Both the position numbers and the translations under genes were made by a program. From Trichosphaerium sp. ATCC 40318 (taxonomy: Eukaryota > Protista > Tubulinea): a DNA stretch of 64,000 bases. The stretch is from NCBI GenBank assembly GCA_038496445.1, contig JALMLS010000307.1, forward strand, positions 48,922-112,921. The letters run 5' to 3'. The notes under the pieces are model-generated. The model worked only from the letters and a program-made list of their open reading frames with translations, had not been told where the DNA came from and made no database searches. Of this stretch, positions 15,842 to 21,434 are shown one piece after another. Each line of letters begins with the position of its first letter. Position 1 is the stretch's first letter.

Positions 15842-17908
15842 TCAAGGAGCACTAAAATAATGGCGATTCTTCCCGTGGCATCATTGCAGAAGTATTGTAA
15901 CCTGAATACATTAGAAATAGAGCGTCAATCACAAAGATATACCCCTTGGTTGAAGGCCATCATGGCGATCACTTAGAGTTCTTGCAAGACTGAGAATATT
16001 TTTAGGTGAACTTCTGAAATCCTTTGATATCATCGAGGCTAGACTCTGCAAGTCACCACGCCACCTTATTAAAATAGCTATTAGAACTGAAATGTCATAA
16101 AGTAACCGCTAGTTACCAGTAAGGCACCGTGACTAGTGTAATCCCTATCTGTGCGCATAGGTCCGCTTTCTCGACGTCACGTGCAGTCCTTGCAGTAGCT
16201 GGTAACCCTTCGACAAAAACGTTGTCATTAAAATGCTGTTCTCCTAGGTGAAAGCATTATTACAACAGAGTTCAGACAATAAACTCTAGAGTAAAGACAA
16301 GCGAACCTTGGTATTCAAGGGCAAGATTATATGCTCCAACAAATACATCAACGACCATTACAGATCCTGTAGAGTGTAATGTACCAAGATAATGCTCTTC
16401 TTCGACATGACAACCTTCGAATAAACGGCGCACTTGAGACAACAAGATATTCTGCATCGCCTTCTTCCCTGACATTCCAAACCTTGACCACTGCCAATTA
16501 AACTGAGGATCAATCAGCTGTAGAGCTAACGGATAGTATCTCATAATTGATCTACCACCGACACCCAGAAGCTGCTTTGTTGACACCCGATACCTAAACA
16601 TCAAATAAATAACAAGACGTTAGAGAGAGGGAGTAAGAAGAACTAGTGACGTGCCATGATTCCATTGAGTTTAGACCAAGATCCAAAGAAGCTTTTTTCA
16701 AAAAATTGCTTTGATTTACAGGATGCTGCCAGTACCCACGTGTAATAAATTTCCAGTTATACTCAGGGTATGCAAAGGTAATTGCTTTGTATATTGATCC
16801 TTTGAAACTTCGACATGATTAACATCAATGACTACCTTCAAGAGCTTTTGGACGTACACCTTTAGAACATTTTCACCTCCAAAATTTTTGATATCTGCCT
16901 TTGACATTCTGTACCAATCCTCAGCTTGCTTGATTGAAGCTCTCTTACTAATATTATCCATAATTATACGAACTTGCTTCCATTCAGTATCATCACATTG
17001 TAATACTGGTTTCATTCTAGGAACCAACTGAGTTGACAATCTTGAAACGTATAATTTTGTTCTGAACCCAAAAATTGGTGTAAAACTCTTTTATTTCTTC
17101 ACAATAGGGATAGAAAGCCAATAAAAAGTATACTTAATAGATAGTAAACTTGTCCGTACTTTTACCTTTTGATATCAAAAAGGCCTTGAGGGCTAAAGCT
17201 GAAGAGAACAAAAAAAACAAACAGAAAAGAAATACGAAAAAAAAAAGAAAAAAACTTACTTGACAAAACGAGATTGAACCCAATCATAGTCAGGATACGC
17301 AGCACTGACTAACCCATACACTCTGTAATCATGTCTATAAGATAACAACAGTTAAATAAAGGTCAACAACCCAAAGATAACGATAAATATGTTAGTACTT
17401 CTTAAGGAGAGATGCACCACCGACACGCTTGATATCAGCTGTTGTGACATTGTACCAATCTGATAATGTCTTGACACTTAATTTTAATCCAATAATCATG
17501 TTTGAAAACCTTGTAGTGTACTTTGATGTACGTTTTAGAGCTATTGGCGAGTTTCTTCGTTTGAATATTAACCAGATGCTTTTAGAGTGGCTATAACGTT
17601 ACCTAAAGCGCCATTGGTCCCATACTGCTTCTGGAAATACGTCTACGAGCATTGCGTGCATGGAATTTGAATACCTGGCGTTAAACTTGCTAACAATACG
17701 AGGCGTACTGGTTAATTACATTACCACCTCCATGGCGATGTATTTGTCTGTGTGTACAACCATACCAATCATCTCGTGTTTTTATTCCTTGTTTTCGCGC
17801 TTTGACGCCTATTAGCACAACCTCATAGAACCTTAGTTGCGTACCAACACTCTCAAAGAAAAGGCGTTTTGCAGTAAAACCATTTAACAAACCGGGTGGG
17901 ATTGCCAT
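15842..17908 (-). CDS. Tandem ~75-aa Trp-rich repeat protein (4 repeats) with C-terminal Vsr/DUF559-like PD-(D/E)XK nuclease domain (gene A)
   Basis: Spliced: FFESVARKQGIKTRDDWY...VFPEAVWDQWRF; LSVKTLSDWYNV..GGASLL..AYPDYDW; IKQAEDWYRM..AYPEYNW; GYWQHPVNQ..SMESWYRV. Nuclease: VMVVDVFVGAYNLALEYQGEQHF...RDVEKADLCAQIGITLVTVPYWW. Includes a GC-AG intron at 16594-16654. The 3' end is tentative. Confidence 0.8.
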
Positions 17909-18051
17909 TTACGTCTTTTCCTCACGAACAAGCGTTTACCTGGTTGCCAAATGAGACAGCACAAGAATTGAGTCAAAGTTAGTTCAACAACGCTAAAATC
18001 GTATACACTGCTTCTTTTACAACGTTCCGCAATTAATGTAAACCTTGTACA
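17909..18051. promoter_or_regulatory. Putative bidirectional promoter of the repeat-nuclease pair
   Basis: 143 bp separate the divergent ATGs at 17908 and 18052. Confidence 0.55.
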
Positions 18052-20418
18052 ATGTCAACGATGACAGCTGCAAGAACAACGCTCAACTACTATAATAATC
18101 CATTAAAACGGATCAAAAAAGCACCTGTAGATGCATGGGATAAGCATAGGGACAATATGGACGCTTTGGGTGAAAAACTAAATGTCACGCATTTAGACGG
18201 TTGGTATACATGCAAATGGGCAGAATTAGCGTCAGAAGGGCTTCCTGGTTTATCTACACTACAACCGTTAGTAATACCAACGTCAAACTACCTCTAACTT
18301 GCTTTATAGGCACAGTAAATCAAAATTAGCGCTATTAAATAGCGCATACCCTCAACACAATTGGAAACCCTTAAAACTCAAGTAAAAACGCTGTATTACT
18401 AACAACGACGCTAATAAAAGCTCTAGTGAACGACCAAAGGGGTATTGGAACCAAAAAACTCATCACCTACAGAAACTAGACGAGATTGCTGAATCAATGA
18501 ATGTGAAGCATCTTGACGACTGGTACAAAGTCACTCTCACAAAGATTCGTGCTCTTGGAGGGTCAAATGTCACTGACAGGTAATCTACAACCTCACCTCA
18601 TATCTACAGACCTTAACAATTTGTTAGATATGGTGATAGATTGGTTGACACCTTAGAGGGCTTGTATCCAAGTCATACTTGGATTCCTTGGAAGTTTGAG
18701 TACGGTTTTTTTTTATTGAAACGAAGTCTCATGTGTTTGTATTACTAGAGTGGCTCCTCCTGGTTATTGGGATAGAGTCAAGCATCAAAGGAAAAGGATG
18801 GAAGATATAGGTGAGCTATTGAAGTTCAAGACGATGGATATGTGGTACACTATGGCTTTTGACGATATTGTAAGCCTTGCTGGTACTTTCTTTAGCAAGT
18901 AAGTATTTTACTTAACGTCTCACATGTGTCGTGACATGCCTTTTTGAACTTTTTTGGTCTCATTTTTGTAAACAAGAGTGTATGGTGGATCGATGTATAC
19001 CACGATGGTCAATGTGTATCCAGAGATAGATTGGCAACCATGGAGGTTCTAGTAAGCATAGTAATCATTGAAACCAAGAAAACACTCCTTTTTTTTTTTG
19101 TCTTCAAGAGTTCGTTGAACTGATGAGAACTTTCCTTAGTCAGGTTCCAAAAGGTTATTGGGATATTATCGAAAATCAATTATATCGTTTTGACAGCTTA
19201 GCTGAAAGTCTTAACGTGAAAGAACTTGATGATTGGTACAAAGTAAAACATGAACAAATACTACAATCAGGCGCATATGGAATGCTCCAAAACAAGCACA
19301 ATTCATCGCTCTCAAGAGCTTTGACATCCCTATACCCAAAGCATAATTGGTCCTTCAAGTACGTATTATACTTTGGAAATAAAAAAATTACGCACGTGAC
19401 ATACAAAAGTCATCAAAAACTGCACTTTCACAGCTTCATTCTTGTTGGTCACTTTTCTTGTTTACTTTTTTGAAACTCATGTTCCATTAGGACTCGATTA
19501 GCTCTATACTACTGGCAAGATACAGAAAATCAACTCAATTTTCTGACAAGAGCCAAAGACAAGCTCAAAATCAACAAACTCGAAGACTGGTACAGCCACT
19601 ACTTTCAACAAAAACCAAAATCTGACGGGTTTTTTTGCATAACAGGTACCGCGTGGGTGCCTCACATTTGAAGCAGATTGGCGGTGCTGGTGTTGTGCAT
19701 TACTTTCCGCGTATGCTACAGATACTAGATCCTACATTCAATTGGGACTGGTCCTTGTTTTCTATAAGCAGTGCCAAGAAGGCAACACAGAGGTATCAAA
19801 CAAACATAACAATATTTTAAAAAAGATTTCTGAAACTCTAACTTCTCTTTTTCCAAATAGGCTACTGATTGCTTGTATCAAAGATATGTTCAGAGACCAT
19901 ATTGTTCTTGAAGAACATAGTGTTGGTATTAAACATACATCGGGCCTACAATTGGTCGTAGATGCTTTCTTGCCAAGTCTAAACTTAGCAATTGAATACC
20001 AAGGTAATTACGAACCCAAAAAAAAAGGAAAATTCTACATTGCTCAAACGCATCAAACTCAGGAGTCCTTATCCATTCATAGGTGAGCAACACTATCGTG
20101 ATCTAGTATATCATACTACTCCAACGGTTTCTATACAATACAAAGACCAAGAGAAGCTACAAAAGTGTCGTAACCACGGTAACCTCTTTTTCTGGTTTTT
20201 TTGCGTGAAAAAACTAATAAATTTATGTTTTTAAAGGTATCGACTTGATTCAAGTGCCATATTGGTGGAAGGGTGATGTTATTGGTCTTGCATCAATTAT
20301 AAGACATCAACGTCCAGATTTGTTGGAAGAATACAGTCAACATGCAGGACTATCTGAACTTGAGCCTGGTGCCAGCAAGATATTGAATCTAATGGCGCCA
20401 CATCAACTCAACTGCTAA
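18052..20418 (+). CDS. Tandem ~75-aa Trp-rich repeat protein (5 repeats) with C-terminal Vsr/DUF559-like PD-(D/E)XK nuclease domain (gene B, 12 exons)
   Basis: Repeats ERPKGYW..LDDWYKV..LYPSHTWIPWKFE (75 aa), VAPPGYW..MDMWY..VYPEIDWQPWRFY (75 aa) and QVPKGYW..LDDWYKV..LYPKHNWSFK (73 aa). Nuclease LVVDAFLPSLNLAIEYQGEQHY...KDQEKLQKCRNHGIDLIQVPYWW. Stop TAA 20416-20418. Confidence 0.85.
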
Positions 20419-20933: not shown

Positions 20934-21434
20934 ATGCTAATTTCTTGCGTATCTAACTCATTTGGAACATTTGCTCCAGTAAACGATTTCCAACCTTCTG
21001 GCGCCCATACATATGCTGGCATTATGGACCACTACAAACCAGGCAATCCTAAAGCATTCTTTCGTCAATTCAAAGATATCATCGAAGAAGAATCACGCAA
21101 TAATACGCTAGACAAGTCTATACAGACCTTCATCTACCTTGGCGGTCGGGGCGACACGCCAGACTTACGCGTAACGCCAGACTCTTACGTCCTTGTTTGC
21201 TTTCTAGACGATGTTAAATCATTGGAGAGTATTGCTGTATTCGCAGATGGAGACAAGAGCTCATCTTGTACGTTGTTGGTTGGGCTGTACGCAGAAAAGA
21301 AGGATATTAAAGTAAGCAACGCTGAAATTACAGAGCTGGCTGCACACATGGGTGTGCCTTACTTTGAAACAGGTTCTTTGCGTGAAGCAAAAACTTTCTT
21401 TGAGAAACACTGTGCGAAAACAACAAAAAAGTAA
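20934..21434 (+). CDS. Intronless divergent small-GTPase-like protein (P-loop absent)
   Basis: C-terminal LLVGLYAEKKDIKVSNAEITELAAHMGVPYFETGS resembles the Ras/Rab G4-G5 region (ILVGNKxD..VS..E...LA...G.PYFETSA). No GxxxxGKS, DxxG or NKxD. Confidence 0.55.
   Translation: MLISCVSNSFGTFAPVNDFQPSGAHTYAGIMDHYKPGNPKAFFRQFKDIIEEESRNNTLDKSIQTFIYLGGRGDTPDLRVTPDSYVLVCFLDDVKSLESIAVFADGDKSSSCTLLVGLYAEKKDIKVSNAEITELAAHMGVPYFETGSLREAKTFFEKHCAKTTKK

What the first reader, a model, noticed from the sequence alone, without database searches (positions are those of the whole stretch)
15842..20418. Head-to-head pair of modular ~75-aa repeat-array + PD-(D/E)XK-like nuclease genes: a candidate natural TALEN-like or OPR-RAP-like system
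Seen: splicing by hand gives two paralogues transcribed divergently from a 143-bp spacer. Gene A has 4 and gene B has 5 copies of a ~75-aa repeat, consensus (P.GYW)...(F/L)..(L/I)A..L.VK.LDDWY.V....I...GG......Y...L...L...YP.H.W.PW.F. The Trp/Tyr/Pro scaffold is fixed and the intervening residues are highly variable. Both proteins end in the same domain, K..Q..L...V(V)D.F....NLA.EYQGEQH...(K/R)D.EK...C...GI.L..VPYWW, with Asp, Glu and His retained in both. Known: D..ExxGxxH is the signature of Vsr/DUF559-type restriction-endonuclease-like nucleases, also seen in giant-virus endonucleases and related to the RAP domain. Repeat-array-plus-nuclease designs (TALEN, PPR-SMR, OPR/FASTK-RAP) recognise nucleic acid modularly. 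Inference: these could be sequence-specific DNA or RNA nucleases whose target is set by the repeat array, co-expressed and perhaps acting as a heterodimer. Possible roles are anti-viral/anti-mobile-element defence or organellar RNA processing; the N-terminus of B (MSTMTAARTTLNYYNNPLKRIKK) is acid-free and presequence-like. I do not recognise the repeat as a named family.
Basis: partly seen in the sequence, partly recalled or inferred. Interest (0 to 1): 0.9.

Follow-up and report, generated by a model that had tools for sequence, protein, structure and literature searches.

The report
Amoeba helical-repeat proteins with Vsr-type nuclease
Two neighbouring, oppositely oriented amoeba genes belong to a large, unnamed protein family that strings together 73-residue five-helix modules and ends in an apparently active DNA-repair-type (Vsr/RAP-like) nuclease. 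The family is probably sent to mitochondria, so it looks like a new version of the repeat-plus-nuclease proteins that process organelle RNA in other eukaryotes.

Summary
Two intron-rich paralogues are transcribed divergently from a 143-bp spacer: gene A (minus strand, about 451 aa, 4 repeats) and gene B (plus strand, 540 aa, 5 repeats). They are 36% identical.

- **Repeats:** all nine ~73-aa repeats match a profile built only from other organisms' proteins (E 1e-13 to 1e-25).
- **C-terminal domain:** both proteins keep every conserved residue of the shared domain.
- **Repeat identity:** the repeat is a five-helix module with no Pfam, PHROG or PDB sequence match.
- **Family:** more than 100 cluster representatives share the architecture (1-11 repeats). 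Named sources are all Amoebozoa. Members are basic (median pI 9.2). Where an N-terminal leader exists, it looks like a mitochondrial presequence.

Best reading: nuclear-encoded, probably mitochondrial, site-selective endonucleases, analogous to FASTK, HPR-RAP or OPR-RAP proteins but built from a new repeat.

The heterodimer and antiviral-defence ideas have no support. Substrate (RNA or DNA), activity and localisation are untested. The scan had already met this family elsewhere in the same genome.

The parts
15852..17908 (-). Gene A, about 451 aa. Ten exons: 17908-17709, 17674-17603, 17509-17399, 17334-17260, 17016-16858, 16807-16655, 16593-16307, 16243-16117, 16064-15943, 15901-15852.
   Evidence: Hand-spliced model translated without stops. 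Intron 16857-16808 is confirmed by a spliced RNA contig. Intron positions are homologous to those of gene B. The 34-nt intron 17708-17675 was seen unspliced in RNA. Intron 16654-16594 is GC-AG.
17909..18051 (.). 143-bp spacer between the two start codons; presumed bidirectional promoter.
   Evidence: Coordinates of the two ATGs. An RNA contig of gene A reaches 17952, so at most 99 bp separate A's observed 5' end from B's ATG. Promoter function was not tested.
18052..20418 (+). Gene B, 540 aa. Twelve exons: 18052-18266, 18310-18381, 18427-18579, 18628-18699, 18749-18898, 18977-19051, 19140-19358, 19491-19589, 19646-19792, 19861-20003, 20083-20178, 20237-20418.
   Evidence: Hand-spliced model with all introns GT-AG and no stops. 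There is no RNA coverage in the single run available.
18052..18123 (+). Gene B N-terminal leader (residues 1-24). Acid-free and basic; looks like a mitochondrial presequence.
   Evidence: 0 D/E and 5 R/K in the first 25 residues. The same bias holds in 55 homologues with leaders: D/E 3.9% against 11.8% in the rest of the protein, Arg 10% against 4.6%. No targeting predictor was available.
18124..19766 (+). Gene B repeat array: five ~73-aa five-helix modules. Residues 25-97, 99-172, 174-247, 249-321, 324-392; DNA 18124-18430, 18434-18752, 18756-19143, 19147-19497, 19504-19766, introns included.
   Evidence: Independent repeat HMM, i-E 8e-13 to 4e-25. Coordinates.
19767..20328 (+). Gene B Vsr/EDxHD-type nuclease domain (residues about 393-511). 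Conserved residues: E418, D435, E446, H452, D470, K473.
   Evidence: 127 bits against the family nuclease HMM. Residue mapping. Fold established on a homologue.
16473..17869 (-). Gene A repeat array: four modules. Residues 14-92, 95-153, 163-228, 229-297. Modules 1 and 2 lack the first helix of the module.
   Evidence: Independent repeat HMM, i-E 1e-17 to 1e-21, with HMM coverage starting at position 19-20 in modules 1 and 2. Coordinates.
16016..16472 (-). Gene A Vsr/EDxHD-type nuclease domain (residues about 298-411). Conserved residues: E322, D339, E350, H356, D375, K378.
   Evidence: 127 bits against the family nuclease HMM. Residue mapping.

Best explanation
Genes A and B are two old paralogues of a large, so far unnamed protein family. 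Every named source of the family is an amoebozoan.

**Architecture.** Each protein is an array of 73-residue five-helix modules (1 to 11 in the family; 4 and 5 here). The array is followed by a nuclease domain of the Vsr / EDxHD-homing-endonuclease / DUF559 / RAP branch of the PD-(D/E)XK fold. That domain keeps the full set of catalytic-type residues.

**Proposed mechanism (inferred).** The protein is made in the cytosol and imported into the mitochondrion by an N-terminal presequence. This is plausible for B and unclear for A. The basic helical array then binds a particular stretch of mitochondrial nucleic acid. RNA is most likely, by analogy with FASTK, HPR-RAP, OPR-RAP and PPR proteins. The C-terminal domain cuts next to the bound site, or holds it.

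**Why the genes are adjacent.** Adjacency most likely reflects an old local duplication of an intron-bearing ancestor, not an obligatory A:B pair.

**Shown:** architecture, family, fold, residue conservation, transcription of A.

**Inferred:** mitochondrial location, substrate, cleavage.
For: **Family and architecture.** 114 cluster representatives match A's exon 7. 105 of the 138 family proteins fetched carry the E[YF]xGxxH motif with enough flanking sequence to cut out the domain. The repeat HMM finds 655 repeats, 1-11 per protein.

**Taxa.** Named sources are Trichosphaerium, Cavostelium and Pyxidicula.

**Fold.**
- The domain model has pLDDT 87.6 and an alpha-beta-beta-beta-alpha-beta order.
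- The Foldseek top hits are T. gondii mitoribosome chains, I-Bth0305I, R2 endonuclease, AbaSI/PvuRts1I and Vsr.

**Catalytic set.**
- Invariant D52, E63, G66 and H69, and near-invariant E35, D87 and K90, in 103 sequences.
- All are present in A and B.
- Their order matches the E-D-x-H-D composite motif of Vsr-like nucleases described in PMC3239194.

**Sequence kinship.** 93-103 of 103 domains hit PHROG homing-endonuclease families, best E 1e-19. DUF2726 is hit by 28 of 103.

**Mitochondrial hint.** 55 leaders are acid-poor and Arg-rich.

**Basic proteins.** Median pI is 9.2.

**Resident host genes.**
- 9 and 11 spliceosomal introns at shared positions.
- One intron verified in RNA.
- Homologues sit among housekeeping genes.

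**Precedent.** FASTKD5, which has heptatricopeptide repeats plus an endonuclease-like fold, cleaves mitochondrial pre-mRNAs in vitro (PMC12242768).
Against: - No localisation, binding or cleavage data exist for any member.
- Gene A has no leader at all.
- Many database members start inside a repeat, so their true N-termini are unknown.
- No targeting predictor could be run.
- By sequence the nuclease is nearer to DNA-cutting phage and giant-virus enzymes than to RAP domains. Pfam RAP matched 0 of 103 at E <= 0.1.
- The retained Asp/His/Asp set is that of Mg-dependent DNA nucleases. That favours DNA at least as much as RNA.
- The catalytic mapping rests on motif order and secondary-structure position, not on a residue-level superposition.
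- The fold and the array model were obtained on a homologue (P0015), because spliced window proteins could not be handed to the structure tool.
Confidence: 0.5

Rival explanations
1. The proteins are mitochondrial but act on mitochondrial DNA, not RNA. They would be site-specific DNA endonucleases or nickases, used in recombination, repair, genome resolution or elimination of mtDNA variants. The helical array would act as a DNA-binding module.
For: - The closest characterised relatives by sequence and structure all cut DNA: Vsr, I-Bth0305I, AbaSI/PvuRts1I and phage homing endonucleases.
- The full E-D-x-H-D set is kept. In contrast, FASTKD4's RAP site carries Asn in place of the Vsr His69 and behaves as inactive (PMC11879112).
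- Viral homologues combine this nuclease with DNA-binding arrays of treble-clef zinc fingers, NUMOD and DUF723.
Against: Every known large family of nuclear-encoded, organelle-targeted helical-repeat proteins (PPR, OPR, HPR, FASTK) acts on RNA (established knowledge). It is hard to see why a mitochondrion would need many different site-specific DNA cutters. No data bear directly on substrate.
Confidence: 0.2
2. The proteins are not organellar. They would be domesticated or selfish homing-endonuclease-like DNA nucleases acting in the nucleus or cytoplasm, for example against giant viruses or mobile elements, or propagating themselves.
For: - The nuclease domain is abundant in phages and in amoeba-infecting giant viruses. 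179 viral loci were found. BFVD hits include Pithovirus, Marseillevirus, Mimivirus and Klosneuvirus.
- PHROG homing-endonuclease families match at E down to 1e-19.
- One 'viral' contig (L003) has the whole architecture.
- Gene A lacks a presequence.
Against: - Presequence-like leaders occur in 55 homologues.
- The genes carry 9-11 old spliceosomal introns at conserved positions.
- Homologues sit among housekeeping genes.
- PADLOC matches are weak only: mREase_II in 19 of 103, best E 2.7e-5.
- The repeats are absent from 79 of the 80 viral loci fetched.
- There is no sign of target-site association or mobility.
Confidence: 0.15
3. The nuclease fold is retained, but the proteins work as non-catalytic RNA binders or structural components. 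They might be mitoribosome or RNA-stabilising factors, like the RAP proteins on the T. gondii mitoribosome or like FASTKD4.
For: - The best full-length Foldseek matches are T. gondii and Tetrahymena mitoribosomal chains and FASTKD4.
- RAP proteins are peripheral mitoribosome components (PMC11652630).
- FASTKD4 binds without cutting (PMC11879112).
Against: D, E, H, D and K are invariant or near-invariant across 103 divergent sequences. That is unusual for a purely structural domain. The global TM-scores to those chains are only 0.15-0.18, and I did not verify the chain identities.
Confidence: 0.12

Closest known systems
FASTK-family, HPR-RAP and OPR-RAP proteins (helical repeats plus a C-terminal RAP/Vsr-like domain; organellar RNA factors of animals, apicomplexans and green algae)
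   Same: - An N-terminal organelle-type leader, then an all-helical repeat array, then a C-terminal Vsr-like PD-(D/E)XK domain.
- Multigene families.
- T. gondii mitoribosome chains are the top Foldseek hits.
- The C-terminal strand motif 'G-I-x-L-x-x-(I/V)-P-Y-W-W' occupies the place of the RAP C-terminal strand. This last point is from my own recollection of RAP sequences and was not tested.
   Different: - The repeat is a 73-aa five-helix module, not a 35-38-aa hairpin.
- The Pfam RAP model matches none of 103 domains.
- The catalytic-type residues are all kept, whereas FASTKD4 has Asn at the Vsr His69 position.
- RAP proteins were reported undetectable in Amoebozoa (PMC8190603).
EDxHD (Vsr-like) homing endonucleases such as I-Bth0305I, and related phage and giant-virus nucleases (PHROGs 559, 9084, 7140, 3339; DUF559; DUF2726)
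   Same: - They are the closest relatives of the nuclease domain by sequence: 93-103 of 103 members, best E 1e-19.
- They share the composite E-D-x-H-D residue set.
- They share the design principle of a modular binding array plus nuclease.
   Different: - The viral enzymes use NUMOD, treble-clef zinc-finger or DUF723 modules, not this helical repeat.
- They sit in introns or inteins, or are free-standing in viral genomes. The window genes are intron-rich nuclear genes.
- I-Bth0305I takes most of its specificity from the dimeric nuclease domains, not from its array (PMC3239194).
TALE arrays / TALEN, PPR-SMR, PUF (programmable one-module-per-base binders)
   Same: Tandem helical modules with a fixed scaffold and variable exposed positions, fused (naturally or artificially) to a nuclease.
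   Different: No homology was detected. The module is twice as long. No one-module-one-base relation or recognition code is known or shown here. The variable columns are simply the non-core positions.
Pfam DUF4046 (PF13255)
   Same: The protein-language-model atlas labels the nearest named clusters DUF4046, with score 0.88 for a single repeat and structural TM 0.54 by target over the array. One family member has a weak match over a repeat (E 0.15).
   Different: PF13255 was not among the 25 best-represented families in a scan of 132 repeats, where no family was matched by more than one repeat. The literature holds nothing on DUF4046. The relationship is unproven.

Membership tests
Vsr / EDxHD / DUF559-type branch of the PD-(D/E)XK nuclease fold | Alpha-beta-beta-beta-alpha-beta restriction-endonuclease-like core that superposes on Vsr-type structures | tested here: met
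Vsr / EDxHD / DUF559-type branch of the PD-(D/E)XK nuclease fold | Composite catalytic motif E...D...x...H...D (Vsr E25, D51, H64, H69, D97; I-Bth0305I E170, D196, N208, H213, D222) | tested here: met
   E35, D52, E63, H69 and D87 (plus K90) are invariant or at least 90% conserved in 103 sequences. All are present in A and B. The correspondence is by order and secondary-structure position, not by residue-level superposition.
Vsr / EDxHD / DUF559-type branch of the PD-(D/E)XK nuclease fold | Metal-dependent endonuclease activity | not testable with these tools
   Needs recombinant protein and active-site mutants.
EDxHD homing endonucleases (I-Bth0305I type) | Gene lies in a self-splicing intron or intein, or is free-standing in a phage genome, and promotes its own spread | tested here: not met
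   These are nuclear genes with 9 and 11 spliceosomal introns. One intron is verified in RNA. Homologues lie among housekeeping genes.
EDxHD homing endonucleases (I-Bth0305I type) | NUMOD/HTH-type DNA-binding modules next to the nuclease | tested here: not met
   There are no NUMOD or other Pfam/PHROG hits in the arrays. Viral homologues do carry NUMOD, DUF4379 or DUF723.
RAP domain (Pfam PF08373) proteins | Match to the RAP profile | tested here: not met
   0 of 103 family domains match PF08373 at E <= 0.1. Exon pieces of A and B also give nothing. An HMM search of PDB sequences, which include FASTKD4 and T. gondii RAP proteins, found no hit.
RAP domain (Pfam PF08373) proteins | Vsr-like fold at the C-terminus of a helical-repeat, organelle-targeted protein | tested here: inconclusive
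DUF2726 (Pfam PF10881) | Match to the profile above the gathering score | tested here: inconclusive
   28 of 103 domains match at E <= 0.1, best 5.4e-6. One full-length member passes the cut-off (P0116, 29.6 against 24.7 bits). The spliced window proteins could not be handed to the tool, and their exon pieces give nothing.
PPR / OPR / HPR / TALE / PUF repeats | 34-38-aa two- or three-helix unit recognised by the family profile | tested here: not met
   The unit is 70-75 aa with five helices. No Pfam family is hit by more than one of 132 repeats.
DUF4046 (Pfam PF13255) | Match to the profile | tested here: inconclusive
   One weak hit over a repeat of P0118 (E 0.15, 13 bits against a cut-off of 22.8). 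There was none in the 132-repeat scan's listed families. The atlas feature and shape similarities are leads only.
Known anti-phage defence systems (PADLOC) | Match to a defence-system protein model | tested here: not met
   Only weak matches to a methyl-directed restriction-enzyme model were found: 19 of 103, best E 2.7e-5.

The most novel reading that the evidence does not exclude
The 73-residue five-helix module is a new class of modular nucleic-acid-recognition repeat. Each module would read a short, fixed number of bases through a few exposed positions. The family would then be a natural set of programmable endonucleases, with the array setting the site and an active Vsr-type domain cutting it. 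It would be a natural counterpart of TALENs or PPR-nuclease fusions, with a decipherable code and biotechnological use.
Probability: 0.2. Interest if true: 0.85.

Novelty: new variant of a known kind. Interest (0 to 1): 0.62.

Why it matters
Helical-repeat proteins with a RAP/Vsr-like end are the main site-specific organellar RNA factors in animals (FASTK), apicomplexans (HPR/RAP) and green algae (OPR-RAP). A survey reported no detectable RAP proteins in Amoebozoa (PMC8190603).

If this family is mitochondrial, it fills that gap with an independently built solution. It uses a different and much longer repeat joined to a nuclease that, unlike many RAP domains, keeps the complete Vsr-type catalytic set.

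That would give a tractable system for two questions:
- whether such domains really cut;
- how a new repeat type reads nucleic acid.

It would also link eukaryotic organellar factors to the homing-endonuclease nucleases of phages and giant viruses.

Neither the repeat nor the family has a Pfam model or, as far as I could search, any literature.

Tried and rejected
**Searches that gave nothing**
- Pfam on ten exon-sized pieces of A and B gave nothing; the pieces are too short and the nuclease domain is split by introns.
- PHROGs on the same pieces and on repeat arrays gave nothing.
- A viral-contig scan with a single exon gave nothing. The scan with the domain alignment worked.
- HMM searches of PDB sequences with the nuclease profile and the repeat profile gave no credible hit.
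- A profile search with a three-repeat alignment (A4) returned no hits at all, although known members lie in its length range. I treat this as a tool blank, not as absence.
- A profile search with the full-length alignment added no named proteins.
- Literature searches: no paper holds 'DUF4046'. 'RAP domain' plus 'Amoebozoa' found only the survey reporting absence.

**Limits of the tools**
In the whole-model searches every strong hit fell on the nuclease domain.
- Spliced proteins A and B could not be given to the remote tools by reference. The fold work was therefore done on homologue P0015, and A and B were tied to it by local HMM scoring.

**Ideas rejected**
- A possible extra mini-exon ('PQGLFDIK') inside A's 243-nt intron, and an in-frame 36-nt intron in A's first exon. 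Neither is needed and neither is supported.
- The idea that 'KHDYW' in another frame marks a frameshifted repeat in A. The spacing does not fit.
- A recent tandem duplication. A and B are as far from each other (36%) as from database homologues (34-36%).

Full report
**1. What is in the sequence**

The window has about 39% G+C and bacterial-style ORFs are short. Three-frame translation shows a eukaryotic gene structure with many short introns.

Gene B (plus strand, 18052-20418):
- 12 exons, 540 aa.
- All eleven introns are GT-AG and 43-132 nt long.

Gene A (minus strand, 17908-15852):
- 10 exons, 451 aa.
- One GC-AG intron (16654-16594).
- One long intron (243 nt).
- One very short intron (34 nt, 17708-17675).

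The start codons are 143 bp apart. A and B align over 390 residues at 36% identity (E 3e-78), and the window holds no other copy.

The single RNA data set that shares words with this stretch comes from a roughly 98%-identical strain and is thin:
- One contig is spliced exactly at my predicted 16857-16808 intron of gene A.
- Another contig runs colinear with the DNA from 17952 to 17617, across the 34-nt intron.
- Gene B is not covered.

So A is transcribed and at least partly spliced as modelled. The 5' part of A is uncertain, and co-expression cannot be judged.

**2. The repeats are real**
- Anchoring on the DWY motif gives four units in A and five in B.
- A profile built only from other organisms' proteins finds all nine at i-E 8e-13 to 4e-25. 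It finds none in 400 shuffled versions.
- Over 655 repeats from the family, the low-entropy columns are W4, N9-Q10-R11, F13, D28-W29, G41-G42, L45-L46, Y49, L56, Y60-P61, W65 and F70.
- The high-entropy columns are the positions between these core residues in each helix. That is what any small helical domain shows, so it is not evidence for a recognition code.
- In an AlphaFold model of a full-length homologue (P0015; pLDDT 87.4, pTM 0.65) each unit forms five short helices.
- Repeats 1 and 2 of gene A lack the first helix.

**3. The introns tell the history**

In both genes introns recur at the same two places of the repeat, always in phase 2: just before Y49 and at the unit boundary. Both genes also share a phase-2 intron inside the DW|Y of the last repeat and a phase-1 intron at EYQ|G in the nuclease domain.

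This has three consequences:
- It supports the model of gene A, because the 34-nt intron sits at the homologous position-49 site.
- It shows that A and B descend from an intron-bearing ancestor.
- It fits repeat growth by duplication of symmetric exons, which agrees with another first-stage note on the same stretch.

A and B are no closer to each other than to database homologues, 34-36% in each case. The duplication is therefore old.

**4. The family**

A search of 1.8 billion cluster representatives with A's largest exon found 114 proteins, and none was above 46% identity.
- Almost all carry E-[YF]-x-G-x-x-H and, about 42 residues later, P-Y-W-W near the C-terminus.
- They carry 1-11 repeats upstream.
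- Named sources are Trichosphaerium (Discosea), Cavostelium (Evosea) and Pyxidicula (Tubulinea), which covers the three large amoebozoan groups.
- The rest are environmental transcripts and contigs.
- On long environmental eukaryotic contigs the genes are single ORFs among housekeeping genes. In two cases they are singletons; in one case they form a same-strand tandem pair.
- Sources call them 'hypothetical protein' at best.
- Earlier notes of this scan place the genome in Trichosphaerium. My own evidence for that is only that the best hits come from that genus, and at paralogue-level identity.

**5. The C-terminal domain**

Conservation:
- An alignment of 103 domains has invariant D52, E63, G66 and H69.
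- E35, D87, K90, P105 and W108 are at least 90% conserved.
- A and B keep all of them.

Fold:
- The AlphaFold model (pLDDT 87.6) has the alpha-beta-beta-beta-alpha-beta core.
- Next come a T. gondii mitoribosomal chain, Bax1, TnsA, Hjc and restriction enzymes.
- Foldseek gives the same picture with modest E-values.

Catalytic residues: the conserved residues follow the order of the composite E-D-x-H-D motif defined for Vsr-like homing endonucleases (PMC3239194).

Sequence kinship:
- The domain is not recognised by Pfam RAP (0 of 103).
- It is weakly recognised by DUF2726 (28 of 103).
- It is strongly recognised by four PHROG families annotated as homing or intron-encoded endonucleases (93-103 of 103, best 1e-19).
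- The same domain is common in phage and giant-virus contigs (179 confirmed loci; BFVD hits). There it is joined to treble-clef zinc fingers, DUF723 or NUMOD modules.
- Only one 'viral' contig (L003) has the helical repeats.
- PADLOC gives only weak hits.

**6. The repeat has no name**
- No Pfam family is hit by more than one of 132 repeats.
- There is no PHROG hit and no PDB sequence hit.
- The atlas tools point to clusters labelled DUF4046, and one member has a sub-threshold DUF4046 hit over a repeat. That is a lead, not a result.
- The full-length model's best Foldseek matches are helical-repeat-plus-RAP proteins: T. gondii and Tetrahymena mitoribosome chains and FASTKD4. Their TM-scores are only 0.15-0.18, so the likeness is in architecture and not in superposable shape.
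- I did not verify which mitoribosomal proteins those chains are. The source paper says RAP and HPR proteins decorate that ribosome (PMC11652630).

**7. Where and on what do they act?**

Location:
- Among members that begin with Met and have at least 16 residues before the first repeat (n = 55), the leaders are acid-poor (3.9% D/E against 11.8% in the rest), Arg-rich (10% against 4.6%) and Ser/Thr-rich. Many read like textbook presequences, for example MLRL..., MLCRTSVFGLRF... and MFRVFWRFG....
- Gene B fits this pattern: 24 residues, no acid, five basic.
- Gene A has no leader.
- The proteins are basic, with median pI 9.2.

Analogy with known families:
- Architecture, leader and multigene family together parallel the FASTK, HPR-RAP, OPR-RAP and PPR families, which all act on organellar RNA.
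- FASTKD5 is now shown to cleave mitochondrial pre-mRNAs in vitro (PMC12242768).
- FASTKD4 binds RNA without cutting and has lost the His (PMC11879112).

Against the RNA reading: the nearest sequence relatives cut DNA, and the family keeps their full catalytic set.

I therefore commit to 'mitochondrial, site-selective endonuclease, RNA more likely than DNA'. My estimates are about 0.65 for mitochondria and, given that, about two to one for RNA.

**8. What is not supported**
- An obligate A:B heterodimer. Pairing is not conserved, and the two genes are old paralogues.
- A TALEN-like one-module-one-base code. Nothing bears on it.
- Antiviral defence. There is no system-level or family-level signal, and the leaders point elsewhere.

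**9. Novelty**

The kind is known: a helical-repeat array plus a Vsr/RAP-like nuclease, probably organellar. The repeat, the retention of a complete catalytic set and the amoebozoan range are new as far as databases and the searchable literature show.

Earlier reports of this scan met the same family at two other places in this genome and reached a similar reading. I did not use them as evidence.

Noticed in passing
L001:8001-10163 and L001:10494-11873: On an 827-kb environmental eukaryotic contig, two family members lie in tandem on the same strand. One has 8 repeats plus the nuclease and the other has 4 repeats plus the nuclease. Both are uninterrupted ORFs. Clustering of paralogues therefore recurs in another organism, but not in head-to-head form.
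   Followed up: partly
L003:65-1273: A 6.9-kb contig filed as viral in IMG/VR (37% G+C) encodes a complete 4-repeat plus nuclease protein. It is the only one of 80 viral loci fetched that has the repeats. It is either a eukaryotic fragment misfiled as viral or a virus that captured a host gene.
   Followed up: no
window 16594-16654 (minus strand): Gene A's intron inside the DW|Y codon pair starts with GC (GCACGT...AG). Gene B has a normal GT-AG intron at the identical position and phase. This is a natural GC-AG variant of a conserved intron. It is not confirmed by RNA.
   Followed up: partly
window 17675-17708 (minus strand): The 34-nt intron needed to keep gene A's first repeat in frame is shorter than any other intron of the pair (41-243 nt). 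It is present, unspliced, in the only RNA contig that covers it. The contig's four coding differences from the window are two synonymous and two conservative changes.
   Followed up: partly
window 17149-17309: The T-rich low-complexity stretch inside gene A's 243-nt intron attracts dozens of unrelated 31-letter RNA contigs, giving a summed depth of about 1480. This is an artefact of low complexity, not expression.
   Followed up: yes
P0050 (1010 aa) and P0116 (696 aa), database homologues: P0050 carries two complete repeat-array-plus-nuclease units in one protein, with motifs at residues 426 and 944. P0116 has the nuclease in mid-protein, followed by another repeat and a second PYWW. These are either natural fusions or merged gene or transcript calls.
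   Followed up: no
window 20934-21434 (+): A 166-aa uninterrupted ORF lies just downstream of gene B and has no Pfam match. It was not examined further.
   Followed up: partly
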